Below, in pieces: positions 1 through 52,400 of a DNA stretch of 64,000 nt (its first letter is position 1; each line of letters starts with the position of its first letter). The notes beneath the pieces are model-generated. The model did not search any database. It worked only from the letters and a program-made list of their open reading frames with translations, and had not been told where the DNA came from. This DNA comes from Macrostomum lignano (taxonomy: Eukaryota). Made by a program: the position numbers and the translations under genes. The stretch is taken from contig NIVC01000176.1 in the NCBI GenBank assembly GCA_002269645.1, positions 744,001 through 808,000 of the forward strand, in the 5' to 3' direction.

Positions 1-2019
1 AGAGCTCTTTGTGAGAGGCTAACGCACTCACATCTCACCAGATGGATCATGTACATGATCAGCCATCGCACGGCCACCGCCAGTCTGCTGGGCTACCAGA
101 GGACGGTCCCCGTCTGCAAAGGTAGCCCGCAAGGTGGGGTGCTGTCTCCAGTTCTCTGGAATATGGTCATCGATGAGCTCCTCCGGGATGTTCGGCCTGA
201 CCCCATTCTGAAAGTTGGATATGCGGACGATGTCACCGCGGTGGCATCTGGTCCGTCCCCTGATACCCTCAGGGACCTTCTTCAGAACTTCATCTACGCT
301 GCTGAGCAATGGGCGGACCGCTGTGGTTTAAGGCTCTCTGAGACTAAGACCGCAGCGATCATGTTCACCAGCAGGACCAAGTGGCAGATTCGGCCGCTCA
401 CGCTTTACGGAAGGGAAATCCCCTTCTGCAAGCAGACTAAATGTCTGGGTATTACCCTGGACCACAGGCTGAACTGGTCTCCCCACGTTCAAACAAAAGC
501 CAAAAAGGCCTTCGCAGTCCTCGCGCAATTGCGCAGGGCCGTCGGCACCACCTGGGGGCTCACCCCCAAGCGCCTCTGGTGGATCTACACTGCAATGGTT
601 AGGCCCGCTATCTCGTATGGCGGCCTGATCTGGGCTAGCGCCCTGCAGATAAAGACCTGTCTAGAGGCTCTCAGGAGAGCGCAAGGGCGCGCTTGTCGCA
701 CGATCATGAGCGCCCCTCCGTCTGCTCCTTACGATGGCCTCAACGCCTTCCTCAACATTCCTCCGCTGGACATCTTTGTCCGCAGGGAAGCGGCTAAGAC
801 TGCCCGCCGTCTAGCTGACGCTGGCATTCGAATCCAGCCCCATAGGGCCATGGCTAAGCGCAAGCTTCTGCCCCACGCTGACCTCTGCCTCAAGGACTTG
901 AGAGACAGCGGCGGGCTCCACGTCCTATCTGACGGCGAACCCCGCACTCTCAACCTCTTTCAGCGCTACAAGGTCACCATCCCCTCTAGGGATGCTGCCA
1001 ATGACCACTGGAATTTCCAGGAGGTCCATTGCTACACGGACGGATCCATCAAAGACGGTCGCGCCGGCTTTGGGGTCTGCATCATCATCAACGGCCGCGT
1101 AATTGCCACGCATGCCCAGCACACTGGTAGACTCTCCACAGTCTTCCAGAACGAAGTCCTTGCCATCAGCTCTTGCGCTGCAGAGCTAAACGCCAAGGTT
1201 ACGAGAGGAAAGACTATTGTCATCCACTCCGACAGCCAAGCGGCCTTACAGGCCCTTTGCCACACCACAACGAACTCCCGGACAGTCGCCGACTGCGCCC
1301 GGCAGCTCAACCTCCTGGCCAGAAGCAATACTGTCAGGCTGAAGTGGATCCCAGGGCACGCAGGGTTTCCGGGGAACGAGCTGGCAGACACCCTCGCCAA
1401 GAGGGGCGGCTCTGGCTCTTTTTTCGGCCCTGCCCCCTGGTCCCTATGCCCTTGACAGTCATCAATCGTCAGATCGACGACTGGGCTGACTCCCTCCACA
1501 GGGACAGATGGGCGGGCACCCAAAACTGCCGGCAATCTCGTGCCGCGGTTCCTTGCCCGTCTCACAGGCTCAGAAACATCCTTCTGAACCAGAATCGGAA
1601 GGATATTCGAGCCCTTGTCATGACCCTTACCGGCCATGGCTACCTCGCCAGGCACTGCTTCCTCCGAGGCGACCTCGAGAGCGAAATTTGCCCCTTTTGC
1701 GAGTGCGACAATGAAGATGCTCAGCACTTTGTCTGTCACTGCCCTTTCTTTAACAGAGACCGGCTACGCTACCTCGGGCCGAACCCGTCCATTGACGAGG
1801 TTTGCCAGCCCGACAGCATCCCACGGCTCATCCAGTTCCTTCGGGCGACTAGACGAGCCAGTTTCTTCCCAACGGAAGATCACGCTGCAGGACGGACCGG
1901 CGGACCACCCTGACCGGCCCCACGCCTCTGCCTGTCTGCGGGCCTTCAGGGGCTAGCGGAATGGGCGACCCTCGCCTCCCCGCTGTGTCTACGGACCACC
2001 CTGCAGCTAAGTCAAGTCA
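1..2019 (+). mobile_element. Non-LTR retrotransposon 3' portion (LOA/Lian-like, I superfamily): RT + RNase H + C-terminal Cys/His knuckle, with one frameshift at about 1433-1437. Runs off the left edge of the window.
   Basis: Frame is open from base 1. RT motifs GSPQGGVLSPVLWNMVID and YADD. RNase H motifs YTDGS, NEVLAI, SDSQAAL and WIPGH..GNELAD. Protein continues in another frame (LVPMPLTVINRQIDDW...LTGHGYLARH...CPFCECDNEDAQHFVCHCP) to TGA at 1913. Short 3' UTR ends in aagtc repeats at about 2010-2019. Clade call is from motif style. Confidence 0.9.
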
Positions 2020-7650: not shown

Positions 7651-7735
<85 letters not shown>

Positions 7736-7763
7736 CAGTTAGTTAGTTAGTTAGTTAGTTAGC

Positions 7764-7809
<46 letters not shown>

Positions 7810-7827
7810 CTTAGTTAGTTAGTAGTC

Positions 7828-7909
<82 letters not shown>

Positions 7910-7910
7910 C

Positions 7911-7950
<40 letters not shown>

Positions 7951-7951
7951 C

Positions 7952-8038
<87 letters not shown>

Positions 8039-8039
8039 C

Positions 8040-8090
<51 letters not shown>

Positions 8091-8115
8091 CAGTTAGTTA
8101 GTTAGTTAGTTAGTC

Positions 8116-8158
<43 letters not shown>

Positions 8159-8159
8159 C

Positions 8160-8204
<45 letters not shown>

Positions 8205-8223
8205 TTTAGTTAGTTAGTTAGTC

Positions 8224-8285
<62 letters not shown>

Positions 8286-8286
8286 C

Positions 8287-8334
<48 letters not shown>

Positions 8335-8443
8335 CAGTTAGTTAGTTAGTTAGTCAGTTAGTTAGTTAGTTATTTAGTTAGTTAGTTAGTCAGTTAGTTA
8401 GTTAGTTAGTTAGTTAGTCAGTTAGTTAGTTAGTTAGTTAGTC

Positions 8444-8486
<43 letters not shown>

Positions 8487-8487
8487 C

Positions 8488-8532
<45 letters not shown>

Positions 8533-8551
8533 TTTAGTTAGTTAGTTAGTC

Positions 8552-8613
<62 letters not shown>

Positions 8614-8614
8614 C

Positions 8615-8662
<48 letters not shown>

Positions 8663-8719
8663 CAGTTAGTTAGTTAGTTAGTCAGTTAGTTAGTTAGTTA
8701 TTTAGTTAGTTAGTTAGTC

Positions 8720-8770
<51 letters not shown>

Positions 8771-8835
8771 CAGTTAGTTAGTTAGTTAGTTAGTTAGTCA
8801 GTTAGTTAGTTAGTTATTTAGTTAGTTAGTTAGTC

Positions 8836-8870
<35 letters not shown>

Positions 8871-8888
8871 CAGTTAGTTAGTTATTTA
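7651..8888. repeat. (TTAG)n microsatellite, about 1.2 kb
   Basis: Seen directly, with recurring TCAG/TTAT variants. Confidence 0.97.
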
Positions 8889-9179
8889 GCAGATACTAGA
8901 CTACTTTTATTTTCAGTCCAGATTTTAGAGGTCCTCGGCGGGTTGTTTTTGTCACAAAATATTTATTGCTTGTTTTGCGCTTAGTCGTGTTTGTCTCTAG
9001 AATGTTTATTACTGAAGTATGAACAGATTTGATAATTGTTAATCCAGCCCTAGTATTAGAATTGCTATAGTATTGATGTGCACTGGAATTTCTGCAAACT
9101 TTCCCGTGTCTGTCTTTTCAGCGCCCAGTGTTCAAATACTGTAACATTGGTAACTTGACATGGTAACTTGTTATAAGGG

Positions 9180-11278: not shown

Positions 11279-12064
<786 letters not shown>

Positions 12065-13720: not shown

Positions 13721-14359
13721 CATCCAAAATAAAGTTATTAACAATCGATGCAAAATTCAAAGGAAGCATTGTTGTAACAAAAGATTTCGCCAGACAGAGC
13801 TGCTGTGTTAGCAAAGCCCGAAGGCAGCCAGCCTCACACGGCAGACAGATTATGCAGCGATATCGAGGACCTGCTGAGGGACAGTTCGACTTGCTTTTGC
13901 ACTGCGGGCATAAAAATAAAGAAACTCTTGTTGGATTCCAGATTTACAGGCAGGTTTTTCCATTCTTAGTCTAAAACTAATTTGGCGAATTTTAATCGGA
14001 TTCGTTAAAGAATCAGATTCCTATATTTTGCGCTACACCTGCGGTTTAGATTGTAACATGAGGTTGAACTCACAGCTGACCACCGCCATGCACATGAGCT
14101 GCATACTTGATAAATACGTTCCTCCTAAATAAGTCGGTAACTGCCATCTAGCTACTACTTTAAGTACTCGTAGCAAAGCAGCAGCTACGACAGCAATTAT
14201 TTTGTAGCCAAGCCAAACCGCACCCAAACCTCATTTATTTCAATTGGACGGTGGTAGCGCTGCCAATGGCAGACAATTGTGACGCAAATTAGCAAAAACA
14301 GATAAATGCCAGCAAAATGCGGCGCTCTCTGCCTTCCACAGCACCGAAATCGAGCCAAC

Positions 14360-15744
14360 ATGGAAGCTCTTTGGAGAATCCTGACAGCCATTGCAGCAGT
14401 TCTGATGCAGACCTTCGGCAGGTCCGCAGGCCGAAGCGAGAGCCTTGATGGGACCGAACAGGAGATCCTGGAAGCTGTTATGTCCGAAAATGAAGCAATA
14501 ATTTCACGATACCTGCAGACGGCTCCTAACGTCGATAGGCTCCTCAGCATCAATGGGATAACATTCTCACCGCTTCACATTGCATGCGAAATAGGAAAAG
14601 ACAAAATTGTCAAGATGTTCATTCAGGCCCAAGCTGACGTCAATATTCAAGAAGTCTATGGCTACTCACCTCTCTGGATTGCATCACAGAATGGTCACGA
14701 CCAAGTTGTGAGCTCACTCATCAAAGCACAAGCTGACGTCAGTCTTCAAGAAGTCGATGGCTGCTCACCTCTCTACATTGCATCACAGAATGGTCACCAC
14801 CAAGTTGTGAGCTCACTCATCAAAGCACAAGCTGACGTCAATCTTCAAAAAGTCAATGGCTATTCACCTCTCTACATTGCATCACATAATGGTCACAACC
14901 AAGTTGTGAGCTCACTCATCAAAGCACAAGCTGACATCAATCTTCAAGAAGTCGATGGCTCCTCACCTCTCTACATTGCATCACAGAATGGTCACCACCA
15001 AGTTGTGATCTCACTCATCAAAGCACAAGCTGACGTCAATCTTCAAAAAAACACTGGCGAGTCACCTATCTACATTGCATCACACCAAGGCTACCACCAA
15101 GTTGTGAGCTCACTTATCAAAGCACAAGCTGACGTCAATCTTCAAAATATCAATGGCTATTCACCTCTCTACATTGCATCACAGAATGGTCACAACCAAG
15201 TTGTGAGCTCACTCATCAAAGCACAAGCTGACATCAATCTTCAAGAAGTCGATGGCTCCTCACCTCTCTACATTGCATCACAGAATGGTCACCACCAAGT
15301 TGTGAGCTCACTCATCAACGCACGAGCTGATGTCAATCTTCAAGTAAACACTGGCGAGTCACCTCTCTACATTGCATCACAGAATGGTGACGAAAAAGTT
15401 GTGAGCTTACTCATCAACGCACGAGCTGACGTCAATCTTCAAAATATCAATAGCTATTCACCTCTTTACGTTGCATCACAGAATGGTCACGAAAAAGTTG
15501 TGAGCTCACTCATCAACGCACGAGCTGATGTCAATCAAGAAGTCCATGGCCGCTCACTTCTCTACATTGCATCACAGAATGGTCACCACAATGTTGTGAA
15601 CCTACTCACCAAAGCACAACAAGATGACGCCAATTCTGAGTATATTGGGAGTCAAAACTCCAGTGTACTTTGTTGTTGTTCGAGTCAAAAAGTAACTAAA
15701 ACTTCATCTGCTTTGGAAAAACCACCGAAAGAGCCAGAATTTGA
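14360..15744 (+). CDS. Exon 1 of the ANK-cGLR gene: hydrophobic N-terminus plus 11 ankyrin repeats (99-bp DNA units)
   Basis: Repeats of [28 protein letters not shown]. The ORF stop at 15746-15748 lies inside the GTAAGT donor. Confidence 0.9.
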
Positions 15745-18700
15745 GTAAGTTTCAATCCTTAATTTTTTGAATATTTTCTCTTTAATTCTCGTTCTCGTTT
15801 TTTAATAGCATTTATCTTTTAGTTTTTCGGGATTGAAAAAAATTCGTGCAATTTTCGGCGGCCAAACAAATAATTTTTGTTGAAATTTTAACAGAAATAG
15901 CACACAAACAGCGAAAGGCGAAAGAGAGAGAAAGGCTGAGTTAATATGGTTTTGACATTGTAATTATACTTTTACCCAGACGAAATAACAAAATATTTTG
16001 GCCATTATTCCCCAGTTTTGATGTGTACCATAGACATTTGGATTGAAAAAATCCATCGCTTAGTATTTTTGTTAATAAATACAGAACAACAAGAAGTAAA
16101 TGAACAAAAAGGAAAATCATTAAAACTAAAGTACCAAAGTATACTCGTGTTATGGCCATTATTTAACTCCGTAACATACTGTATAATCTACCATTGCTGA
16201 TTTCAGCACACTGGTAGGAAAAATGTTGACTGCCCTGCCGATTGGCCATTTAGCGAGGGGGAGGCCGCTATCTCAATAAACGCTCAGATCAACACCGTTT
16301 GCCCAATAAAGTTGAACCAACCATACCACAGACACTCTGCATGGACAGTCAGAGGAAATTGGACCATTTTCAAGAACAATCCATGCAGACATTTGCTCTG
16401 GACACTCATCCTCTAGACACTTGCCCCTGGGTCATGGACACTCAGCCCCGAGTCAATGGACTCAATGCTCACCCTATGGACCCACCTCCGGCCTGCCCAA
16501 CCCCACCTCCGGCCTGCCCAACCCCACCTCCGGCCTGCCCCATCCCACCTCCGGCCTGCCGCACCCCACCTCCGGCCTGCCCCACCCCACCTCCGGCCTG
16601 CCCAACCCCACCTCCGGCCTGCCCAACCCCACCTCCGGCCTGCCCCATCCCACCTCCGGCCTGCCGCACCCCACCTCCGGCCTGCCCCACCCCACCTCCG
16701 GCCTGCCCAACCCCACCTCCGGCCTGCCCAACCCCACCTCCGGCCTGCCCAACCCCACCTCCGGCCTGCCCCATCCCACCTCCAGCCTGCCGCACCCCAC
16801 CTCCAGTATGCCCCAGACCACCTCCAGTCTGCTCCACTTCAGCTTCACTGCTTTAAAACTCAATTCTAAGTCCTCGTCTTTGAATGGACCCTTTAATTCC
16901 TCTTACTCAATAATTCTAATAATTAATTACACCTGCCCCAGTGGCCAGATGTGCAACCGACAGCTCAGCCGCAGCTATTGCACGGCGCATCTGAAGGCTG
17001 AGTACGGCTGTTCAGTCCAATGACTGGGGGGTCGACACACACACACCCTCAATTACCCCAGCTAATGCTGGCACCCATTTTACAGCTGGGTGAACTGAAG
17101 CAATGCAGAGTCAAGTGTCTTGTGAAGTGATACATTTTGGCCCTAAAAGTTCCTATCCAGCTCAGTAGTAGGCAAGAGGGAAGTTCTAACACAAAATTGC
17201 CAAAAATTAGCCTTTTCCCCTTAGCTCAACATCTACTAAAATCTATCCATACACAATGCGCTTACATCTAAAATCAGCTATCACCATGCAATACCTACAA
17301 CCGCTGATCTAAGGGGAAAAACCAGTCAGCCACCCCCTTCCGACCCCTTCCATAAATGCACTGTTCGGGAGAGCTGCCCGATGCTACACAAATTAGTCAG
17401 TTAACCCTTCTAAAGCTGCACGTTTTTCACCAACAACTCACATTTTAGATGCAGTCTCAGCGACTCAGAGCTGAGCGAGCAGCTGCACTCAGCACTGGAG
17501 CAGTCAGGCTTCACCGAATCCCGAGCCGCATTGCAGAGCGCGGCTGCCGATGCCCTGCAGCAGATTCTGAGAAGTCGACTGAGCAAAAATCCATTTTTTG
17601 TGGTCGGCAGCTACTCAGAAGGCTGGGGCAACAGCCTGACGACACTGGATGGCAGAACTGACGCCAATTCCGACATTGATGTGATGTATTTGATTCCCGG
17701 CCGAGAATACCACCTGAAGGACCTGTGCGAGTGCGATGGAGCTCCGGAGCAGCACGAGCTGGTGAACGGGCACATTCAGTGCTCAGGATTCGGTGAGTTC
17801 TCTCTTAGGGTGTGAGATGGTCTGTTAGTTCTGTTAGTGATTGCCGGAGATTCTTGCAGTGCAGACGTTTGCTTTTTGTGTGTCACACATTGGTGCAGAA
17901 ATTATAGCTGTATGCGATAGCTGAGCTCAGTAAGCAGATCTAAACAAGAACCTTACTGTCATCCTTTAGTCTTTCAACGTAAAAAACGCATGGGAAGTTC
18001 GATTTATTGATGCTGTCGGGTAGAAATCTGAATTGGAAAATTTTTGTCTGTATTTTGCCCCATCGGGAACTAATCGTCTTTACAGCCTCCAATCCTGCCA
18101 GTACAAAACCCGGTTTCACACTGAGGCCAGCGCTGGACAATGTCTCCGCGTGCCGTCTCTGCCGCTATCCGCCCATCGCACCGCTGCTGCCAAACCGCGT
18201 CTTCAACATCCCCCATCCGGTGCTGGAGGCCCTCCGCAATGCTCTCACCTCCGCCTCATCGCCCTGCCACGTGGTGCACGCAGCCTCTCCTGACCGAGGC
18301 GGCGAAGAGCTCCGCGTGAGCACCAGCTTCCTGGAGAACCGGATGCTGCGAAGTCTCACTACCCTGCAAGGTCAACTGTTCGTCACACTCAAATACCTGG
18401 TCAAGAAGGTCATCTGTCACAAGAATGGCTTCAATCAGCAAGGCTTGAAGTCCTACCACGTGAAGACCATCACCTTCCGAATGGTGGACGAGACGCCGGT
18501 CGAGCAGTGGAAGAAGGAGAACCTCGTGAGTCTCACGAGACAGTCGCTGCAGATGCTGCTCGACTGTGTGGAGAAGAGCCGAGAGCAGGACAGACAAACA
18601 CCTGACACACCTGACCGATCTCGGGGTCGCATCATGAATCATTTCTTTCTCAGCGATGCGGCCATCTACCTCAAGGGTGCGGGCAAGGAGAGAGTGGACC

Positions 18701-19479
18701 AGCATTTGGACGGCATCATGAGCACACTGAGAACAGTAATCGATCGGCTGCCCCAGCTGCTGCAGCAGTTCATCGGCAGTCTCAGACCTGTGAGCGACTC
18801 AGGCACATTCTACTTCCACCCGTTCCAAATCCTGCCGGATCTGAGGCCGATGCCGCTCACGGAGTCCAGTACTCTCGAGTACTATCAGATCTACGACGTG
18901 GCGAGAGAGTGTCTGGTGCGTCTCTCTTGCAGTGACTGCAGCCCGCGATCTCAGGAGTCGCTCACAGAGCTGATTGCCAGACTGCCAGACTGCGCCCTCT
19001 CAGCACGGGAGGCTCTCAGAGCGCTGGCTTGCCTGAAGTTCGGCTACCGAGGAACTGCAGAGAGAGTCGTGAGCTCGTGCTCAGGTCACTCGGTGAGCAG
19101 AGGCATCGCTTGGTCTCGTGAGAAGTCGGCGACTGAAGCGACTGTGGAGTTCGTGATGCGGCATCTGAGTAGCCGCGACTCGGCGTGGAAATTCTGCTTT
19201 GAGTTCGACCAGCGACCGAAACTCGAATTCTGGACAGGAGCTCTGGTGGAGTTTTTTCCCTTCCAGTTGACAGGCAGTTATAAGAGCAACTATTTTTACA
19301 TGAACTTTGACGCTTTGCTGTGGGCTCTGCGGCTAGAGCTGCGGACTGATGGAGAAGCGCGCGCTCAGGACTGGATCGGGGATGTGGCTGAGAGAGAGGA
19401 CTCGGATGAACAGGAGCTGCTGGTTGCCACTCCGTATTCTTCAAATCCGGAGCAGCGTCTGAAAATATTTAAGAAGTAG
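14360..19479 (+). CDS. Ankyrin-repeat + Mab-21/cGAS-like nucleotidyltransferase (cGLR-like) fusion protein. Exons 14360-15744, 17449-17792 and 18086-19479; about 1040 aa (alternative start 14306).
   Basis: Splice phases match: GA|gtaagt...ttttag|A (phase 2) and G|gtgagt...tacag|CC (phase 1). Eleven 33-aa ANK repeats. NTase signature VGSYSEG...SDIDVM, third acidic residue in [14 protein letters not shown], and Mab-21 motifs [12 protein letters not shown] and [11 protein letters not shown]. Confidence 0.88.
16478..16830. repeat. 21-bp C-rich minisatellite (CCACCTCCGGCCTGCCCAACC)n in intron 1 of the ANK-cGLR gene
   Basis: Seen directly. Confidence 0.93.
16930..17125 (+). mobile_element. Possible SINE or L2-type LINE 3'-tail fragment
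   Basis: GGCACCCATTTTACAGCTGGGTGAACTGAAGCAATGCAGAGTCAAGTGTCTTG resembles the widely conserved MIR/L2-type tail motif. Recognition only. Confidence 0.4.
17449..17792 (+). CDS. Exon 2 of the ANK-cGLR gene: nucleotidyltransferase GS and DxD active-site region
   Basis: [21 protein letters not shown]...[33 protein letters not shown], flanked by canonical splice sites. Confidence 0.88.
18086..19479 (+). CDS. Exon 3 of the ANK-cGLR gene: rest of the Mab-21 domain plus an uncharacterised C-terminal helical region
   Basis: ORF 18007-19479 entered at the acceptor tacag|; Mab-21 motifs as listed for the whole gene. Confidence 0.85.
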
Positions 19480-20430
19480 GAGACGATGGGAGCAGATCTT
19501 CAGAATTGGCTGAAGGTATATCGGAAGTAAGTGCAGAAAGAAGCAGAGGAAAAAATGGCATTTTTAGGACTGCTGGACAGTGAAAGCTGCAGGAAGTGTT
19601 TTTAATGCATATAAACATTTTTTGCTTTTGATGAGTTGCTAATTAATATTCGATTTTAAAACTTTAAACTTCAGCCCCGAATTTCATGCTTGCTGTTTTC
19701 AATTTGCTTTTTAATCCACTGAAGTACGACTTGGAGTGCAGAACATCAGCTAGGAGTGCAATATAAAGCCACACTGAAAATTCGCTAGGCAAAATCTGCA
19801 ACAAAACATTTGCTCCCATTTGAGAGGCTTAAGGGGGGGCAATATATTTGCTATTTCCCCAAATTTTAGATTTCGCTACTCCGAGAACTCTTGCTAATTA
19901 ACATATTTTAGTTTCAGTTTGTTGCATGAAATTTTTAGTAATAAAGAACAATAGCAGTGCCATTTTCGTTGAATTTGATGGAAATTCTTATTTTATACCA
20001 AAATTATCAGCTCAGCAATATTTTAGCAAACATATGTACATAAACTTCTCATTAACAAATTTATCTAATTACAATTTCGTCCGCAGCCCACCGACCGCTT
20101 TTGCACTCTTATATTTTAGAGCACCACATTGTTTTAATTCCCCCGTGGTTTGATTGCTGTAGTAAAAATAAAGAAGTAATATTTACAGTTTTATAGCAAA
20201 TCCTTTAAATATTGCTCTGTGTTTGTTTAAATGTTCCGTAATCATATTCTGCTTTCTTGTTCAATATTTCTACTGCTTTGCTCTCTTATCTAATTTTTTG
20301 TTTGGATATATTTTACTCACATTCATGAAGACATCTATGAAAGGTAAATTCCTTGCTGGAATTTGTCTCTAGCTATTATTGAACACGAAAGCTCCTGTTA
20401 AATACTCCTTGCTTTATCGAAAAAATAGAG

Positions 20431-21159
<729 letters not shown>

Positions 21160-28738: not shown

Positions 28739-28788
28739 CAGTCCTTTCTACCGTTACCGTGTCAGTGCCTGAGATTGGAGTTGCCCTC

Positions 28789-28827
<39 letters not shown>

Positions 28828-28886
28828 TCTTTCTTTCTTCAGTCCTTTCTACCGTTACCGTGTCAGTGCCTGAGATTGGAGTTGCC

Positions 28887-28979
<93 letters not shown>

Positions 28980-29007
28980 GTCTCTCTCTCTCCCCTCTCT
29001 CTCTCTC
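28430..29007. repeat. Compound tandem repeat: a fixed unit of about 60 bp interleaved with variable-length (TC)n tracts, 5-6 copies
   Basis: GTGCCTGAGATTGGAGGTGCCCTCC(TC)nTTTCTTCAGTCCTTTCTACCGTTACCGTGT repeated. Confidence 0.9.
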
Positions 29008-30851
29008 CGTGCCAAAAGGTTTCAGTGCGGAACAAATCCAAAGACAGACGCAGGAATTCAAGCCGCGCTGAGCGCCATCAAGACAGGAAACTGGAACACA
29101 CACGACTCGGTACAACGCGCACTAAAAGCCATCAGCAGCGAACTGACAGAAGACAATGGAATGCTACTTCGAGGAGACCTCATTGTCGTCCCAGAGTCAC
29201 TACGGAGACCAATTTTGCAACTGGCCCACACCGGACATCTTGGTGCCGATCGAACACTCAAGCGTCTGCAGACCAAAGTCTGGTGGCCAGGGATGCGCAG
29301 TGACTGTGGTACCTTCGTGAAATGCTGCATTCCTTGTCAAGCGTCGGACACTCTTACCAATCAGACACCTCTGAGACCGACAAAGTTACCCGAGGGTCCC
29401 TGGCAGCAACTTGGAATGGACTTCTTCGGACCTGTCCAAGGCCAAATGCTTCTAGTTACCACGGACCTGTATTCTAAATACCCGGAGATCAACATTTTGA
29501 GCTCGACAACAGCAGAGAGTGTAAAACCGCATCTGAGGAGACTTTTCAGCAGGCACGGCGTTCCAGTCGAAGTCGTGACAGACAACGGACCTCCTTTCAG
29601 TTCGGCCGATTTTCGTAGCTTTCTAGCCGACTTCGGAGTCCATCATCGCCTCATCTGCCCGCTGCATCCGGAGTCCAATGGGGCAACCGAGCGCCTCAAT
29701 CGAAGCATCGGCAAAGCAGTGAAAACCGCAGTTTCTGAAGGTCGCAATTGGAGAGAAGCCATCGAAGACTGGCTGCTGGCTTTCCGCACGACACCACACA
29801 GGGCTACCGGACGCACCCCTGCAGAGCTTCTAATGGGCAGAAAAATCAACGACGGAATCCCGACTAGCAAACCGTTCGTTCCAACAGCCGGTGAGGTCCA
29901 CGACACTGTTAGAGCCTGGAATCGCAAGTATGCCGACAGCATGAAGCAGCAATTTGACACGCGCAACGCAGTGAAGGATCACAGCATCCAACCCGGCAAC
30001 CAAGTGCTCCGCAAACAACAGACGCTAAACAAACTGCAACTGCCTTTCGAGCCTCTGCCATGGACGGTAAAGGAAGTTCGAGGAGACACCTGCATCTTAG
30101 AGCGAGGGCGACAGTCCTGCATGCGCCATGTAACGCATCTGCGACCTATCAGCCAACCTGCCTCTGCCGGCCAGCCTGCCTCAGCCGGCCAACCTGCCTC
30201 AGCCGGCCAACCTGCCTCAGCCGGCCAGCTTGCCTCAGCCGGCCAACCTGCCTCAGCCGGCCAGCCTGTGTCTGCCGGCCAACCTGCCTCGGCCGGCCAG
30301 CCTGTGTCTGCCGGCCAGCCTGTGTCTGCCGGCCAACCTGCCTCAGCCGGCCAGCCTGTGTCTGCCGGCCAACCTGCCTCGGCCGGCCAGCCTGTGTCTG
30401 CCGGCCAGCCCGCCGGCCAGAGGGACTTCCTAGCCTTCAGGAGGCATCCACGTGAGGCTAAAGAGGGGCCGAAAATTTATAAATGACAAGCGCTGTTTGA
30501 ATCACAAACTGAACTGACAACAACAATATTATTTTTATTCCCGTCAACTGATTTACTGACAATAATAATATTTTTTATTTCCGTCAGCTGTTTTTTTTTA
30601 TTCCTCATCACTTTTTCCTTAGGGGGGAAGAATTGTAGGCTTGCGCCTTAGCAGTTCTCAGTGTCGTATTTACTAGCCTCTTTCTATCTCTCTGTCATTC
30701 TATATCGGCGTACATTCAACTCTCTAACCATGCACGCGCCAACCCCCCATTGACTAATATTTAAATACACGCATTGGCATTTACTCGTATTTGGGACTTT
30801 GCTATCGGTATCGATCCAAACAAACTCACACGGCTTGTCAGAGTTCCTACA
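29008..30851 (+). mobile_element. 5'-truncated Ty3/Gypsy LTR retrotransposon: integrase ORF ending at 30486, PPT 30621-30632, 3' LTR 30634-30851
   Basis: H2C2 motif (AHTGHLG...CIPC). DDE residues in MDFFGP, VTDNGPPF and SNGATER. The PPT AGGGGGGAAGAA is followed by an LTR bounded by TGTAGG...CCTACA inverted ends. An 18-bp (SAGQPA/V) repeat lies in the integrase tail. Confidence 0.88.
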
Positions 30852-32050: not shown

Positions 32051-32354
32051 TTGCTGATCAAAAATAAGATAGATGGGCCACTTCACTAAATGCATTCTTA
32101 CCAAGGACTACTAAGCAAACAAACAATTTAAGTAATTTTAAGTAGTCCTTGCTCCTTACATAGTCTGTGTTTCTCCAGAGCTTCAACTGTTCTAAAACTG
32201 CAGTTAAACAAATATATTTTGTACGGCGGCTTTTGACGAACACACGAAGGGTTTGTAACGCAATTTAAATATAAACAGAAAAATTGCAAATTATAACTGT
32301 TTTGCTGAAGCTGGCTATGGTGCAAGTGGGAGGGCGCCGGCGCTTAAGCGGCAG

Positions 32355-33390
<1,036 letters not shown>

Positions 33391-45986: not shown

Positions 45987-46211
45987 TCAGCACTGATTGT
46001 CCAGGTAGTAAATGGTGACGGAGCCGTCAATGCTGGCCTCATTGCCACCGGTGACGCTTGAGCACGAGTTGCTCAGAGCCATGGTGGCGTTGCAGAACGA
46101 GCCGCCTCCGCCCCCGGCCTGCAGCGAAGAATTTTAATGCCATTGCCAATAACTCTACTGTTAGTAGTGTGCTAATCTGTGCCTTCAATATTAATACGAC
46201 TGATACTACAA

Positions 46212-46281
<70 letters not shown>

Positions 46282-46344
46282 ATGATAATAATACTACTAC
46301 TAGTACTACTACTACTACTACTACTAATGATAATAATACTACTA

Positions 46345-46422
<78 letters not shown>

Positions 46423-49400
46423 TTACTACCACTACTACTACTGCTACTAACATTAATAATAATACTACTACTAGTACTACTACTAATACTACTACTACTA
46501 CTCACCTGCTTGTCGTGGGTGCCGGCGCCGCCGCCGCTGTAGCCGCCGCCGCCGCCGCTGGCGCCGTTGTCTTCGCTGCCGCCGCCGCCACCGCCAAAGC
46601 CACCAACGGCGCCAGGATTCATTCCGCCGGGTTCGCCGCCAACGAACGGCTCCCTGGTGCCGGACAGTGGACCGCCGTGTCCGGCGCCGCCGTGCTCGGG
46701 TCCGGCGCGCCTGGCGCCACCGCTGAGCCAGCCGGCGCCGCAGCCGCCGTGGTAGCTGGCGGCCTCCGTGTTGGTCCAGCCGGCGCTACCGTTGAAGCCG
46801 CCCCGGCCAGTCTGGCCGAGATTCGGTCCGGACGAGTCGGTGCCGTTCGTGCCGGCCTGTCCGGGGACGCCGGTAAGGGTGTAGCTGGCGCCGCCGCCGC
46901 CGCCAGCGGCCAGGTAGAGGACCAGCGAGCGCGGGTTGTAGACAAAACTGCCGCCGCCACCGCCCGTGCCAGCATTGTCTTCGATCTGGATTTTCAAGGG
47001 TACAGTCCAATGTCACATCTCTGGAATTCTCTATGGTCTTTTCCTAGGGATTTTCCAAAATCGTGTTTCAGGATAGGGAGTTTCCATTGTCGTGACCCAG
47101 GGATTTACCAAGTTCACATTTCAGGAATTTCCCATTGTCGTGTCACAGGGATTTGCCAAGGTCATATTCCAGGAATTTTCCAGTGTCGTGTCCCAGGGAT
47201 TTGCCAAGGTCATATTCCAGGAATTTTCCAGTGTCGTGTCCCAGGGATTTGCCAAGGTCATATTCCACGAATTTTCCAGTGTCGTATCCCAGGGATTTGC
47301 CAAGGTCATATTCCAGGAATTTTCTACGGTCTCTTTCTAGGGAGTTTCCTAGGGATGCTAGCAATAGGCGTTGCTAGTTTGGTTTTAGGAGTTACGATCC
47401 TTTGTGTTTGTGATGTTTCGGGTTTATGATTTCGGGAGTTGTCTCTTCTAGGGTTTGTGATGAAACCCTCCCCCCGCCCTTACGTGAGGAAAGAGGCGAG
47501 AGCCAATCAGAAGGCAGCGAGGGGGAGAGAAGAATAACAAGACTGAACCAGACAGAGAGGGAGAGAAATAAGAATAACAGGACTGAACCAGACAGAGAGG
47601 GAGAGAGATAAGAATAACAAGACTGAACCAGACAGAGAGGGAGAGAGATAAGAATAACAAGACTGAACCAGACAGAGAGGGAGAGAGATAAGAATAACAG
47701 GACTGAACCAGACAGAGAGGGAGAGAGATAAGAATAACAAGACTGAACCAGACAGAGAGGGAGAGAGATAAGAATAACAAGACTGAACCAGACAGAGAGG
47801 GAGAGAGAACAGAGTAAACAGAGGCCAATAGCAGATGAACTGAAGAAAGTCGCTGAAAAAAGTACTTTTCAAATCCAAAAGTAAAGAAAATCTAGAAAGA
47901 AAGCATTACCGACGGCCGACGAGAAGGCGAAACTTCGCTAGAATTGCCTCCATGTTGGCCGACAACAATGGCCAGCATCTGGCCGCGCTCCAGGCGGAAT
48001 TTGCCTCGCGCCGAGGCGCCCCGTCCACCGAGCCAGGTGCCGCCGCCCGAGTTTCCGTAGCTGGTCGAGTGGTTGCCACCCGCCGCGCCTGCGGCCGAGA
48101 TTTCAAAGCAGCCAGTTTTTGGCACAAAATATCTGATGATGCTCCCTGTGGCGCCCTGGCCTGTGGCGTCGAATCGAACATCTAAAAAATGCCGGCGCTT
48201 TCTTATCATACTACTTTCCCGCCATAGGTCTTCAGTAGCATAATCAGCGCTTTTTTATCTCACTCACATCTTGGCGCAGTGCAGAAATAATCCACCTCAA
48301 TGCGCATCATACCGCCGCTGAAGGAGAAACACTCGTCTGGGATAATGTCCTGGGATCGAATCGCATTCTGGAGGAACGGGTCCATCAGCCAGGTCGTGTC
48401 CAGCTGGCAGCCTTCTTCTGTCTTCTTGCAGCTGCGGTTGTTTCCGGTTGAGGTGTCGGGAACTGCGTCCTTGACCCATCTGATCACTGACCCCTGTCAG
48501 ATCCCTGAGGCATCTGATCACTGACCCTGTACTGACCCCTATCAGATCCTTGACCTGTCTGATCACTGAACCCTATCAGATCCTTGACCCATCTGATCAC
48601 TGACCCCTATCAGATCCTTGACCCATCTGATCACTGACTCCTATCAGATCCTTGACCCATCTGATCACTGACCCCTATCAGATCCTTGACTCATCTGATC
48701 ACTGACCCCTATCAGATCCTTGACTCATCTGATCACTGACCCCTATCAGATCCTCCGATCCTTGACCCCCTTATGACCCCTCCGATCCTTGACCCCCTAA
48801 TGACCCCTTCGATCCTTGACTCCCTTATGACCCCTCCGATCCTTGACCCCCTTATGACCCCTCCGATCCTTGACCTTTTCTATACTTGGCCCCTTCATAT
48901 TCTTGACCCCCTCGTATTCTTAACCCCTCCTATACTTGACCCCCTCCGATCCTTGACCCCCTCCGATCCTTGACCCCCTCCGATCCTTGACCCCCTCCGA
49001 TCCTTGACCCCCTCTGATCCTTGACCCCCTCCGATCCTTGACCCCCGATCCTTGACCCCCGATCCTTGACCTTTCCTATACTTGACCCCTTCCTATTCCT
49101 GACCCCCCTTCGATCCTTGACCCCTGACCCACCTTTGATTATCGGCCCCCTCGGATTCTTGACCCCCTCTGACCCCTCCGACCCGAGCGACTCACTTGCG
49201 CCGAACCCTAGCAAGCGCGGTATGCGAGGTGCAGTTGTAGATGCTGCATCCGGCATCCTCCGCCACCATCGCGGCCACAGCCGAGCTGCTGCGTCCCCGA
49301 GTGAGGTTCTCAAGCTTAACTGAGCACTTCAGCTTTGAGTAGCGCACCTGCAGGATGCCCATGGTTGAGCGCTCGCCGCAGACCAGCGGCGACTCCCGCC

Positions 49401-52400
49401 GGCCGTCAGTGTCGAACATGACCACAGTGTGAAGGGTCGAGTTGCCTGCGAAAGGTTGATGGAGTGAAATTTATTCTGTCACTCGCATGTCACTCCCTTT
49501 GCTAGAACTCCCACTGTCACTCCCATGCATTCTTTCTTTCTCCAATTCTGCCATTCTGATTCTGTCACTGCCATTCTGTCACTCCTATTCTGTCACTTTC
49601 ATTCTGTCACTCCCAGTTTGTCACTCCCATTCTGTCACTTTCATTTTGTCACTCCAATTCTGTCACTCCAATTATGTCACTCCAATTCTGTCACTCCAAT
49701 TCTGTCACTTCCATTCCGTCACTCCGGAACTCACCGCGGAAGCTGACGCACACCTCGCTAGAGTATTTCTGCCCGTTGAGCACGTTCATCCCCTTGCAGC
49801 AGATGGGGTAGTAGAGATTCACGTGGGTCAGGCTCAGGCTCTGTCCTTTGGTCGCAACCAACTGACTGGTCTGGATAATCCGCCAGGAATAGGTGACCTC
49901 CGGCATGCCCACATCCGCCTGGCAACTGAGGGTGTCCGATTTGTCGATGCTGCTGTCGTTGGTAACGACTCGACCTGTGGCCGCATTGATTATACTGACT
50001 CGCCTGAGACCGGCTTTGTAGGCCACCTGGGTGGGGATTGAGAATTTTATTGCTTTGGGGAAATTTTGAAAGTACTGGATTCTTATAAAGATTTTAGAAA
50101 GTATCAGGAGACTACTGTAAGTGTCAGGATTCTACATTAGGTGTCAGGAGACTACAGTAGATGTCTGGAGACTAAAGTAGATGTCAGGAGACTGCAGTAG
50201 ATGTCAGGAGACTACAGTAGATGTCAGGAGACTACAGTAGATGTCTGGAGACTACTGTAAGTGTCAGGATTCTACATTAGGTGTCAGGAGACTGCAGTAG
50301 ATGTCAGGAGACTACAGTAGATGTCAGGAGACTACAGTAGATGTCAGGAGACTACAGTAGATGTCAGGAGACTACAGTAGATGTCAGGAGACTACAGTAG
50401 ATGTCAGGAGACTACAGTAGATGTCAGGAGACTACAGTAGATGTCAGGAGACTACAGTTTCAGGAGGTTACAGTGTCAGGATTCTACAGTGTCAGGATTC
50501 TACAGGGAGTGTCAGGATTCTACAGTAAGTGTCAGGAGACTACAGTAGATGTCAGGAGACTACAGTTTCAGGAGGTTACAGTGTCAGGATTCTACAGTGT
50601 CAGGATTCTACAGGGAGTGTCAGGATTCTACAGTAAGTGTCAGGAGACTACAGTAGATGTCAGGAGACTACAGTTTCAGGAGGTTACAGTGTCAGGATTC
50701 TACAGTGTCAGGATTCTACAGGGAGTGTCAGGATTCTACAGTAAGTGTCAGGAGACTACAGTAGATGTCAGGATTCTACAGTGAATGTCAGGATTCTACA
50801 GTGAATGTCAGGATTCTACAGGGAGTGTCAGGATTCTACAGTAAGTGTCAGAAGTCTACACAGGTCCCCAGAAGACACAGGGATTTCAGGGATGTCAGGG
50901 ATATCAGTGATGTCAGGAGATGTCAGGGGGTGTCAGGAATGTCAGGGGATGTCAGGGGTTGTCAGGAATGTCAGGGATGTCAGGGATGTCAGGAATGTCA
51001 GGGATGTCAGGGATGTCAGGGATGTCAGGAATGTCAGGGATGTCAGGGATGTCAGGTATGTCAGGGATGCTAATGACACACCTTCAACCGTTGGGTCGCG
51101 GTCTCCAAAGTGAGCGGATCGTCAGCCCGGCACTCGAACGAGTCGGTGGCATTGTTCGCGTCGGGCTGGTAGGCCAGGTTCTGCCGGACAGTCAGGCTGC
51201 TGCCGTCGGCGCTCCAGTCGAATTCGAAGTCGGTGGGCAGCGAGGGCACTGCGGCACCGTTGCGGAACAGAGTCAGCTGGGCCTGCTGGGGCGCGCTGGG
51301 CAACACGACCACCTGGCACGAGACGGTGTTGGCCTGCGACTTTAAAGGCGCGTCGCTGGCAGATTTCAGCTCGAGGGAAGCCTGCCGGGGTTCGAATTTT
51401 GTAGGATTTGTTTAAATGGGGTGCGTATATGACTTTTTGTTTATCTGCTTTGCTTTTACCTAATCAGGGGTCTATTAAATTTCCAAAGAAATTAACAATA
51501 CTTTACAGTCGTCTGCAGTAGCAAGCATCAATCTACAATAGTAAAAATCAGACTACAGAAAACTACAGTAAGCTACAGCATACTACAGTAAGTTACAGCA
51601 TACTACAGTAAGCTACAGCATACTACAGTAGGCTACAGCATACTACAGTAAGTTACAGCATACTACAGTAAGCTACAGCATACTACAGTAAGCTACAGCA
51701 TACTACAGTAGGCTACAGCATAACTACAGTAAGCTACAGCATAACTACAGTAAGCTACAGCATAACTACAGTAAGCTACAGCATACTACAGTAAGCTACA
51801 GAATAATACAGTAAGCTACAGCATAACTACAGTAAACTACAGCATAACTACAGTAAGCTACAGCATAACTACAGTAGGCTACAGAATAATACAGTAAGCT
51901 AGAGCATACTACAGTAGGCTACAGCATAACTACAGTAAGCTACAGCATAACTACAGTAAGCTACAGCAAAACTACAGTAGGCTACAGCATAACTACAGTA
52001 AGCTACAGCATAACTACAGTAAGCTACAGCATACTACAGTAGGCTACAGCATAACTACAGTAAGCTACAGCATAACTACAGTAGGCTACAGCATAACTAC
52101 AGTAAGCTACAGCATAACTACAGTAAGCTACAGCATAACTACAGTAAGCTACAGCATAACTACAGTAAGCTACAGCATAACTACAGTAAGCTACAGCATA
52201 ACTACAGTAGGCTACAGCATAACTACAGTAAGCTACAGCATAACTACAGTAAGCTACAGCATAACTACAGTAGGCTACAGCATAACTACAGTAAGCTACA
52301 GCATAACTACAGTAAGCTACAGCATAACTACAGTAAGCTACAGCATAACTACAGTAGGCTACAGCATAACTACAGTAAGCTACAGCATACTACAGTAAGC

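What the first reader, a model, noticed from the sequence alone, without database searches (positions are those of the whole stretch)
14360..19479. Ankyrin-sensor / cGAS-like (Mab-21) nucleotidyltransferase fusion: candidate protein-sensing innate immune receptor
Seen in sequence: three exons with matching splice phases join 11 ankyrin repeats to an NTase core. The core keeps the GS motif (VGSYSEG), DxD (SDID) and the third catalytic Asp (ALDNVSAC), plus the Mab-21 lobe motifs ([15 protein letters not shown]). The ORF track splits this into three unrelated-looking ORFs. Established knowledge: animal cGAS-like receptors (cGLRs) and bacterial CD-NTases make cyclic nucleotide second messengers. 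cGAS and fly cGLRs are activated by nucleic acid, and ankyrin arrays are protein-binding modules used as sensors in some NLR-type receptors. Inference: this receptor may replace nucleic-acid sensing with an ANK ligand-binding or autoinhibitory module that switches on cyclic oligonucleotide synthesis. Its roughly 250-aa C-terminal region is unrecognised and could be an effector or regulatory domain.
Basis: partly seen in the sequence, partly recalled or inferred. Interest (0 to 1): 0.92.

Follow-up and report, generated by a model that had tools for sequence, protein, structure and literature searches.

The report
Flatworm ankyrin–cGAS-like receptor gene
This is a real three-exon gene of the flatworm Macrostomum lignano that joins eleven ankyrin repeats to a cGAS-like enzyme core with an intact active site, but this kind of fusion, in this species, was already catalogued and partly tested in 2023, so it is a new copy of a known kind.

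Summary
Exons 14360-15744, 17449-17792 and 18086-19479 have GT-AG introns with matching phases. An independent gene model spans the ANK/NTase junction, and a 59%-identical paralogue has both introns at the same position and phase. The product (1040 aa) has 11 ankyrin repeats, a cGAS/Mab-21-fold core and a family-specific 232-aa C-terminal domain. Foldseek's top hits for the core are all cGAS, and the profile matches cGAS at E=5e-7. GS, DxD, the third Asp and the cGAS-type R-x-S-x-S and SYHxKT pocket motifs are present and conserved across paralogues. The C-terminal domain folds confidently and has no Pfam, PDB or BFVD match.

The source is Macrostomum lignano. The gene is one of dozens of paralogues: 86 representatives at 50% identity score E<=1e-30, and 40 of 42 scanned carry ANK.

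The "novel receptor" reading is overstated. Li et al. 2023 list ANK-cGLR fusions as a class, include M. lignano members with Ank_2 domains, and cloned five NTase cores. None is among their 15 active enzymes.

New details: ANK repeat differences cluster on the binding face, and some relatives carry caspase or RING domains. Enzymatic activity, ligand and downstream receptor are unknown.

Verdict: new member of a known kind, moderate interest.

The parts
14360..15744 (+). Exon 1 (CDS start at Met 14360; an upstream in-frame ATG at 14306 has a poor context). It encodes the N-terminal hydrophobic segment, the ANK array and most of the linker.
   Evidence: ORF 14306-15748; donor GA|GTAAGT at 15744/15745; Kozak gccaacATGG; N-terminus aligns with P0009, P0020 and P0044.
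14360..14422 (+). N-terminal ~21-aa hydrophobic/amphipathic segment [21 protein letters not shown], conserved in the closest subfamily. Its role is unknown.
   Evidence: Comparison of N-termini.
14537..15625 (+). Eleven ankyrin repeats. Nine are near-identical 33-aa units forming a 99-bp DNA tandem array (14630-15619, 10 copies, 87% matches, no indels). Differences between repeats cluster at repeat positions 6, 7, 8, 10, 18 and 22 (hairpin tip and end of helix 1).
   Evidence: Pfam Ank E=1.4e-74, 11 stretches; TRF; per-position variability and non-synonymous/synonymous counts.
15626..15744 (+). Acidic, low-complexity linker with a Cys cluster ([10 protein letters not shown]), continuing into exon 2.
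   Evidence: Translation; pI 4.4.
15745..17448 (+). Intron 1 (GT-AG, phase 2, 1704 nt). It contains a 21-bp minisatellite x17 (16481-16837) that creates spurious proline-rich ORFs.
   Evidence: The homologous intron in the P0006 locus is 105 nt, at the same position and phase.
17449..17792 (+). Exon 2: N-terminal 'spine' helices and the first part of the NTase N-lobe, with GS (17606-17611) and D-I-D (17672-17680).
   Evidence: G53/S54 and D75/D77 are conserved in 22-24 of 27 paralogues. AF2 places GS after strand 49-52 and DxD on strand 75-89.
17793..18085 (+). Intron 2 (GT-AG, phase 1, 293 nt), splitting an Ala codon as G|CC.
   Evidence: Same codon split in the P0006 locus.
18086..18774 (+). 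Exon 3, first part: the rest of the cGAS-like core. It holds the third catalytic Asp (18136-18138), RVSTSF (18313-18330, aligned to cGAS WRLSFS), the Mab-21_C region (18385-18579) with KSYHVKT (18448-18468), and MNHFFL (aligned to bivalve CPNYF).
   Evidence: Pfam PF20266; HMM against PDB gives cGAS E=5e-7; hhalign against human cGAS E=4e-5; hhalign against bivalve cGLR-like proteins E=1e-34; Foldseek.
18775..19476 (+). Family-specific C-terminal domain (232 aa, helical with a small sheet). It folds confidently and has no recognisable relatives outside the Macrostomum family.
   Evidence: AF2 pLDDT 85, pTM 0.87; no PDB hit below E=0.9; no BFVD hit below E=1.3; no Pfam hit; hhalign against bivalve tails gives probability 0.4%.
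19477..19530 (+). TAG stop (19477-19479) where the closest paralogue has Leu, followed by a still-recognisable vestigial tail (ETMGADLQNWLKVYRK*).

Best explanation
This is an intact three-exon gene of Macrostomum lignano. It is one of dozens of paralogues of a lineage-specific family whose conserved architecture is an ANK array, a cGAS-like (Mab-21 fold) nucleotidyltransferase core and a family-specific C-terminal domain. The family is the flatworm branch of the invertebrate cGLR radiation.

Most likely mechanism (inferred, not shown): the ANK array is the ligand-binding or regulatory module. Its repeats are kept nearly identical except on the canonical binding face. On engagement, the NTase core uses NTPs to make a nucleotide second messenger that is read by an as-yet unidentified receptor. 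The core keeps GS, DxD, the third Asp and the cGAS-type R-x-S-x-S and S-Y-H-x-K-T pocket motifs, but it lacks the Zn thumb and the strongly basic surface of DNA sensors. The C-terminal domain appears to form one compact unit with the core and probably acts in regulation or output.

Shown here: gene structure, domain identities, fold, motif conservation and family distribution. Inferred: catalysis, ligand type and immune role.
For: Gene model: GT-AG introns with matching phases. An independent model spans junction 1. Intron positions and phases are conserved in the P0006 locus.

Fold: the AF2 model has pLDDT 87 and pTM 0.89. Foldseek's top 19 hits are cGAS (E down to 6e-7, target TM 0.5-0.58), followed by MAB21L1, MB21D2, a CD-NTase and MiD51/49.

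Sequence: the family profile matches cGAS at E=5e-7 and Drosophila cGLR1 at E=1.4e-3. hhalign places RVSTSF on WRLSFS and KSYHVKT on SSYHVKT and shows that the Zn thumb is absent. The core matches bivalve cGLR-like proteins at E=1e-34, with GS, SDxD and D in register.

Catalytic residues are conserved in about 21-24 of 27 paralogues, and GS and DxD are at least 90% conserved among 42 representatives.

ANK: 40 of 42 family representatives carry ANK. Differences between repeats are mostly non-synonymous (8.4 against 1.0 codons per pair; at least 30 against 6 events) and sit at hairpin and helix-1 positions.

Expansion: 86 representatives at 50% identity score E<=1e-30, and all those sampled are M. 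lignano.

Immune or cell-death flavour: relatives are fused to caspase or RING domains.

Charge: core pI is 7.3 and whole-protein pI 5.9, below the >8.5 typical of nucleic-acid-sensing cGLRs (Li et al.).
Against: There is no biochemical evidence of activity. Five cores from the same family were cloned in Li et al.'s screen, and none is among the 15 active enzymes, which came from insects, anemones, molluscs, hydras and corals. Those constructs lacked ANK and were only offered dsDNA and dsRNA.

PF03281 does not match, and PF20266 only just passes for this copy.

The segment between DxD and the third Asp is about 40 residues shorter than in cGAS.

No STING or other receptor was identified, and STING is reported lost in parasitic flatworms.

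This copy has a premature stop that clips the extreme C-terminus.

The non-synonymous/synonymous pattern among repeats is suggestive but is not a formal test of selection.
Confidence: 0.6

Rival explanations
1. Non-enzymatic scaffold or adaptor. As in MiD49/MiD51 or MAB21L1, the Mab-21 fold would serve as a nucleotide-binding or purely structural platform. ANK and the C-terminal domain would recruit partners, and relatives would bring caspase or RING effectors into proximity, in the manner of an NLR-like hub.
For: MiD51, MiD49 and MAB21L1 are among the Foldseek hits. No activity is reported for five family cores. Relatives are physically fused to caspase or RING domains, so an output need not be a diffusible messenger. 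STING is reported absent from parasitic flatworms.
Against: GS, DxD and the third Asp are conserved across a deep paralogue radiation, along with the cGAS-type pocket motifs. From my own knowledge of those families, these residues are degenerate in MiD49/51 and MAB21L1. cGAS ranks above all the non-enzymatic members.
Confidence: 0.17
2. An active nucleotidyltransferase that is not a cyclic-dinucleotide synthase. It might make linear 2'-5' or 3'-5' oligonucleotides (OAS-like), or nucleotidylate a protein or RNA substrate held by the ANK array.
For: The Pol-beta NTase signature is generic. One paralogue scores on PF01909 NTP_transf_2, and UniProt labels several fragments NTP_transf_2. The N-lobe is shorter than in cGAS. 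ANK could present a protein substrate rather than an activator.
Against: The closest structural and sequence relatives are cGAS and cGLRs, not OAS, poly(A) polymerases or TUTases. The R-x-S-x-S and SYHxKT motifs align with cGAS pocket residues.
Confidence: 0.13
3. A decaying or redundant paralogue with no function of its own, sitting in a repeat-rich region of a recently duplicated genome.
For: The TAG is premature relative to the closest paralogue, and a vestigial tail follows it. Intron 1 is inflated to 1.7 kb by a minisatellite. The surroundings are retroelement fragments and satellites. Very many paralogues exist.
Against: A 1040-codon reading frame is open across three exons with intact splice sites and all catalytic residues. 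P0001, 97% identical and from another assembly, ends at the same stop, so the truncated form is stably present. C-terminal tails vary among paralogues anyway.
Confidence: 0.1

Closest known systems
ANK-fused cGAS-like receptors (cGLRs) catalogued by Li et al. 2023 (bioRxiv 10.1101/2023.02.22.529553 / PMC9980059), including M. lignano PAA45980.1, PAA86972.1 and PAA68676.1
   Same: Same species, same family and same architecture (N-terminal Ank_2 repeats plus a cGLR core). PAA45980.1 falls in a cluster that matches the family profile at E=9e-119. The cloned cores start at the same helix as exon 2 here.
   Different: This particular paralogue is not one of those listed or tested; its nearest database entries are 97% and 89% identical. 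The C-terminal domain, the binding-face pattern of ANK variation and the caspase/RING relatives do not appear in the parts of that paper and its tables that I could read.
Vertebrate cGAS (e.g. PDB 6ct9, 4k8v, 8sj2)
   Same: Bilobal Mab-21 NTase fold (Foldseek E=6e-7). GS, DxD, D, R-x-S-x-S and SYHVKT are shared.
   Different: No Zn thumb. The N-lobe insert is shorter. The core pI is near neutral instead of basic. ANK and C-terminal domains are added. Identity is about 14%.
Bivalve cGLR-like proteins of ~700 aa (Mercenaria, Sinanodonta and others; the type screened by Li et al.)
   Same: The core is clearly homologous (hhalign probability 99.9%, E=1e-34) with the catalytic motifs in register. 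They also carry a long C-terminal tail.
   Different: The tails are not detectably homologous (probability 0.4%). The bivalve proteins sampled lack the ANK array and have the longer N-lobe insert.
Human MB21D2, MAB21L1 and MiD51/MiD49
   Same: Same fold.
   Different: They rank lower than cGAS. From my own knowledge, MAB21L1 and the MiD proteins lack an intact catalytic triad, which this family keeps.
Bacterial CD-NTases (CBASS)
   Same: Distant structural similarity (ClCdnE, Foldseek E=3e-4).
   Different: No PADLOC CD-NTase model matches any of 10 family members. This is an intron-containing animal gene.

Membership tests
Animal cGLR (cGAS-like receptor; Mab-21 superfamily with active site) | Bilobal cGAS/Mab-21 nucleotidyltransferase fold | tested here: met
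   AF2 pLDDT 87, pTM 0.89. Foldseek's top 19 hits are cGAS, E 6e-7 to 2.5e-5, target TM 0.5-0.58.
Animal cGLR (cGAS-like receptor; Mab-21 superfamily with active site) | Catalytic signature G-S ... [D/E]x[D/E] ... [D/E] | tested here: met
   G53-S54, D75-I-D77 and D132 are present, conserved in paralogues and in register with bivalve cGLR-like GS/SDxD/D. Spatial convergence was not measurable.
Animal cGLR (cGAS-like receptor; Mab-21 superfamily with active site) | Significant sequence similarity to Mab-21 / cGAS family models | tested here: met
   PF20266 scores 25.0 bits against a cut-off of 24.1 for this copy and hits 7 of 10 family members, best 2.8e-9. The family profile matches cGAS at E=5e-7. 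PF03281 does not hit.
Animal cGLR (cGAS-like receptor; Mab-21 superfamily with active site) | Synthesis of a nucleotide second messenger | not testable with these tools
   Five ANK-less cores from the family were cloned by Li et al., and none is among their 15 described active enzymes.
Animal cGLR (cGAS-like receptor; Mab-21 superfamily with active site) | Ligand-dependent activation and a cognate receptor (STING or other) in the same organism | not tested
   The M. lignano proteome could not be queried for STING. The literature reports loss in Schistosoma, and Li et al. Table S5 gives zero counts for cestodes.
ANK-cGLR fusion architecture (Li et al. 2023, Fig. 1C / Table S2) | Ankyrin repeats and the cGLR core in one polypeptide | tested here: met
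   Spliced model, junction-spanning model P0001 and conserved introns. 40 of 42 relatives carry ANK.
Bacterial CD-NTase (CBASS) | Match to CD-NTase HMMs | tested here: not met
   PADLOC: no CD-NTase hit for 10 members.
Non-catalytic Mab-21 proteins (MiD49/51, MAB21L1) | Degenerate active site | tested here: not met
   The triad is intact and conserved.

The most novel reading that the evidence does not exclude
The Macrostomum ANK / cGLR / C-domain family could be a large repertoire of protein-sensing (not nucleic-acid-sensing) receptors. Recognition surfaces would diversify on a homogenised ANK scaffold. Signalling would proceed without canonical STING, through the family-specific C-terminal domain or, in some members, through a directly fused caspase or RING effector. 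That would be a cGLR-to-cell-death axis not described in animals.
Probability: 0.15. Interest if true: 0.8.

Novelty: new member of a known kind. Interest (0 to 1): 0.38.

Why it matters
Most animal cGLRs are orphans with unknown ligands. ANK-fused members are the most obvious candidates for sensing something other than nucleic acid. M. lignano is a transgenic-ready, regenerating flatworm in which such a family could be studied genetically.

What this window adds is modest:
- a well-supported gene model for one more paralogue;
- evidence that variation among the ANK repeats sits on the binding face;
- a confidently folded C-terminal domain with no known relatives;
- the observation that relatives are fused to caspase or RING domains.

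It does not reveal a new class of receptor, because the architecture and this species' family are already in the literature.

Tried and rejected
- PF03281 (Mab-21 NTase) gives no hit.
- Single-sequence phmmer against PDB gives only E~0.06. A family profile was needed to reach significance.
- PADLOC gives no CD-NTase hit.
- Foldseek of the C-terminal domain against PDB and BFVD finds nothing significant, only weak TPR-like fragments.
- hhalign of the C-terminal domain against bivalve tails finds no homology.
- tblastn of the protein against the window finds no second copy.
- Literature searches for Macrostomum + cGAS, Platyhelminthes + STING + cGLR, and cGLR + caspase domain returned nothing beyond Li et al. 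2023 and Wu et al. 2014.
- I ran no further search on STING. Ranked global output could not show absence from one species.
- The bacterial origin suggested by the 'Kangiellaceae MAG' hit P0031 is rejected. It is a 1,065-nt contig and probably mis-binned animal DNA.
- Other long ORFs in the window are retroelement fragments or repeat artefacts.


Full report
**1. What is in the sequence**

The region holds three + strand ORFs (14306-15748, 17531-17815 and 18007-19479). They can be joined through two canonical GT-AG introns:
- Exon 1 ends at 15744 (GA|GTAAGT).
- Exon 2 runs from 17449 to 17792 (ttttag|A ... TTCG|GTGAGT).
- Exon 3 starts at 18086 (ttacag|CC).

The phases match (phase 2, then phase 1). 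The joined CDS is 3177 nt without internal stops. It has a strong Kozak context, and the peptide [21 protein letters not shown] aligns with the N-termini of paralogues P0009, P0020 and P0044. That gives a 1040-aa product.

**2. Is the splice model real?**

No transcript data were available, but two independent lines support it:
- UniProt A0A1I8HGT1 (P0001, 97% identical, from another assembly) reads ...KEPEFE|CSLSDSE... across junction 1 and continues through junction 2.
- The genomic locus of paralogue P0006 (BOX15_Mlig031899g1, 59% identical in the core) has the same three-exon layout. Intron 1 is in phase 2, exactly 7 residues before the conserved LSxQLxSAL helix. Intron 2 splits the same Ala codon as G|CC in G[FY]|AS[NS]PA.

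Conservation of intron position and phase at that divergence is hard to explain unless the three exons form one gene.

**3. Source and family**

All close database relatives are from the free-living flatworm Macrostomum lignano. An exhaustive HMM search of 1.84 billion representatives at 50% identity, using an ANK-free family profile, gave 1088 hits at E<=1e-3, 185 at E<=1e-10 and 86 at E<=1e-30. Every strong hit that I looked up is M. lignano.

The weaker hits (E about 1e-12 to 1e-15) cover only the Mab-21 core. They come from bivalves (Mercenaria, Sinanodonta), an annelid (Lamellibrachia) and a sea anemone (Actinostola).

A profile-profile comparison with the ~700-aa bivalve proteins gives probability 99.9% and E=1e-34 for the core, with GS, SDxD and the third Asp in register. 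The family is therefore the flatworm branch of the invertebrate cGLR radiation.

One 'bacterial MAG' hit (P0031) sits on a 1,065-nt contig and is almost certainly mis-binned animal DNA. The window holds only this one copy.

**4. Domains**

*(a) ANK array.* Pfam finds 11 repeats (Ank E=1.4e-74). At the DNA level, nine to ten of them form a 99-bp tandem array (14630-15619, 87% matches, no indels). Differences between repeats are overwhelmingly non-synonymous: a mean of 8.4 non-synonymous against 1.0 synonymous codon differences per pair, and at least 30 against 6 minimal events. They concentrate at repeat positions 6, 7, 8 and 10 (hairpin tip) and at 18 and 22 (end of helix 1). From my own knowledge of ANK and DARPin structures, these are the canonical target-binding positions. 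The pattern fits a homogenised scaffold with a diversified binding face, but it is not a formal test of selection.

*(b) NTase core.*
- Single-sequence HMM evidence is thin. PF20266 scores 25.0 bits against a cut-off of 24.1, PF03281 does not hit, and cGAS in PDB scores only E~0.06.
- Family-level evidence is solid. The profile matches cGAS at E=5e-7 and Drosophila cGLR1 at E=1.4e-3.
- hhalign against human cGAS gives E=4e-5. It places EELRVSTSF on ETWRLSFSH and KSYHVKT on SSYHVKT, and it shows that the Zn-thumb insertion is absent. The SYHVKT correspondence is confirmed independently by the PDB alignment.
- The AF2 model of the 578-aa non-ANK part is confident (pLDDT 87, pTM 0.89). Foldseek's top 19 PDB hits are all cGAS, followed by MAB21L1, MB21D2, a bacterial CD-NTase and MiD51/49.
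- G53-S54, D75-x-D77 and D132 are conserved in about 21-24 of 27 paralogues. GS and DxD are at least 90% conserved among 42 divergent representatives.
- In the model, GS follows strand 49-52, DxD lies on strand 75-89 and D132 on strand 130-139. This is the expected Pol-beta topology. I could not measure convergence of the carboxylates because coordinates are not exposed.
- No bacterial CD-NTase HMM matches.
- The core is near neutral (pI 7.3; whole protein 5.9). Paralogues range from 6.0 to 9.1. Li et al. associate pI >8.5 with nucleic-acid sensing.

*(c) C-terminal domain (18775-19476).* It is 232 aa and confidently folded, both on its own (pLDDT 85, pTM 0.87) and as part of a compact 578-aa model (pTM 0.89). 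It has no Pfam hit and no PDB or BFVD fold match (best E 0.95 and 1.3). It shows no homology to the tails of bivalve cGLR-like proteins (probability 0.4%). It is conserved throughout the Macrostomum family.

**5. What the literature already says**

Li et al. 2023 (bioRxiv 10.1101/2023.02.22.529553 / PMC9980059) surveyed about 3,000 predicted cGLRs.
- They explicitly list ANK-repeat fusions as an architecture class, and they note that 'most platyhelminthes' have only Mab21-like proteins.
- Their Table S2 lists M. lignano PAA45980.1, PAA86972.1 and PAA68676.1 with Ank_2 domains.
- Their Table S3 shows that five M. lignano cores (#89-93) were cloned for the 140-enzyme screen. The constructs start at the helix that exon 2 encodes here, so they lacked ANK. 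PAA45980.1 belongs to a cluster that matches my family profile at E=9e-119.
- The 15 active enzymes they describe come from insects, anemones, molluscs, hydras and corals. So no flatworm member is among them. The paper itself cautions that many cGLRs look inactive because their ligands are unknown.

Wu et al. 2014 (PMC4117786) report loss of cGAS and STING in Schistosoma, and Li et al. Table S5 gives 0/0 for cestodes. M. lignano is not in that table, so whether it has STING remains open.

**6.

Of 42 strong representatives, 40 carry ANK. ANK is therefore the constant partner and is not one of many swapped N-terminal domains. Rare additions are:
- a C-terminal Peptidase_C14 caspase domain, in P0081 (PAA59752.1), P0189 (PAA80948.1) and P0096 (PAA93319.1);
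- a RING finger plus a WSC domain, in P0085;
- a P-loop kinase-like domain;
- EGF/DSL in one very long model that may be chimeric.

I found no paper describing cGLR-caspase fusions in the held library.

**7. How it most likely works**

Shown here: a real gene, an ANK array, a cGAS-fold core with an intact and conserved catalytic signature and cGAS-type pocket motifs, a novel C-terminal domain, and a large species-restricted expansion.

Inferred: the ANK array binds a ligand, most plausibly a protein. The arguments are the binding-face variation, the acidic or neutral charge and the missing Zn thumb. The ANK array would control an NTase that makes a nucleotide signal, read by an unknown receptor. 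The C-terminal domain would be regulatory or an output module.

The failure of ANK-less cores to appear among active enzymes argues weakly against simple ANK autoinhibition. It fits better with ANK-dependent activation or with a missing cofactor. I give this composite reading about 0.6.

Rivals are a non-catalytic scaffold that couples to caspase or RING effectors (0.17), a non-cyclase NTase (0.13) and a decaying redundant copy (0.10).

**8. Peculiarities of this copy**

- The TAG at 19477 replaces a Leu of the closest paralogue, and a vestigial tail is still readable after it.
- Intron 1 is inflated to 1.7 kb and holds a 21-bp minisatellite.
- The exon-1 donor contains an in-frame TAA, so intron retention would give an ANK-only protein.
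- The neighbourhood is retroelement debris and satellites.

**9. Verdict**

The domain assignment is supported. The functional claim is plausible but untested. The novelty claim is not supported, because the architecture and this species' family are already published and partly screened. This is a new member of a known kind. Interest is moderate (0.38), carried by the unrecognised C-terminal domain, the ANK variation pattern and the caspase-fused relatives.

Noticed in passing
window 19477-19530: The TAG stop replaces a Leu codon of the closest paralogue (P0002: KK-L-KMMRADLLSWLK; window: KK-*-ETMGADLQNWLK). The homologous tail is still readable in frame for 16 codons, so this copy is clipped by about 20-30 residues at its extreme C-terminus.
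   Followed up: partly
window 15742-15750: The exon-1 donor GA|GTAAGT contains the in-frame TAA. An unspliced transcript would therefore encode an ANK-only protein of about 462 aa. This is not conserved in the P0006 locus (L001 6875-6890).
   Followed up: partly
window 14360-14422 and 15668-15680: A ~21-aa hydrophobic N-terminal segment is shared with P0009, P0010, P0020 and P0044. The linker contains a Cys triplet ([10 protein letters not shown]). Together these hint at membrane association or palmitoylation. Not tested.
   Followed up: no
window 16481-16837: A 21-bp minisatellite (CCCACCTCCGGCCTGCCCCAC x17) inside intron 1 generates spurious 120-200-aa proline- or glycine-rich ORFs on both strands.
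   Followed up: yes
window 49-1455 and 28759-30486: Retroelement ORFs: reverse transcriptase plus RNase H (49-1455), and integrase zinc-binding plus core domains (28759-30486). They are probably LTR-retrotransposon remnants.
   Followed up: partly
whole window, e.g. 7651-8889 (TTAG x310), 11280-12064 (ATAG x196), 20432-21159 (TTTG x182), 32352-33390 (CAGA x260), 51553-53852 (21-mer x111): The density of micro- and minisatellites is extreme (52 TRF rows at score >=200). They account for many of the long 'ORFs' in the window.
   Followed up: partly
related proteins P0081 (PAA59752.1), P0189 (PAA80948.1), P0096 (PAA93319.1), P0085: M. lignano relatives fuse the same cGAS-like module to ANK plus a C-terminal caspase (Peptidase_C14) domain, or to WSC and RING domains. 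I found no description of cGLR-caspase fusions in the held literature. The gene models need checking for chimerism.
   Followed up: partly
L002 (GCA_036350755.1, JAZBNS010000776.1, 1-1065): A 1,065-nt contig binned into a 'Kangiellaceae bacterium' MAG encodes 347 aa that are 41-43% identical to the Mab-21_C plus C-terminal domain of this family. It is probably contaminating DNA from an unidentified animal, and it is the only sign of the C-terminal domain outside M. lignano.
   Followed up: partly
window 46179-47429 (+), 57649-58596 (-), 62003-62521 (-): Long ORFs without Pfam matches, or with only a weak low-complexity match. Whether any is a real gene was not examined.
   Followed up: no
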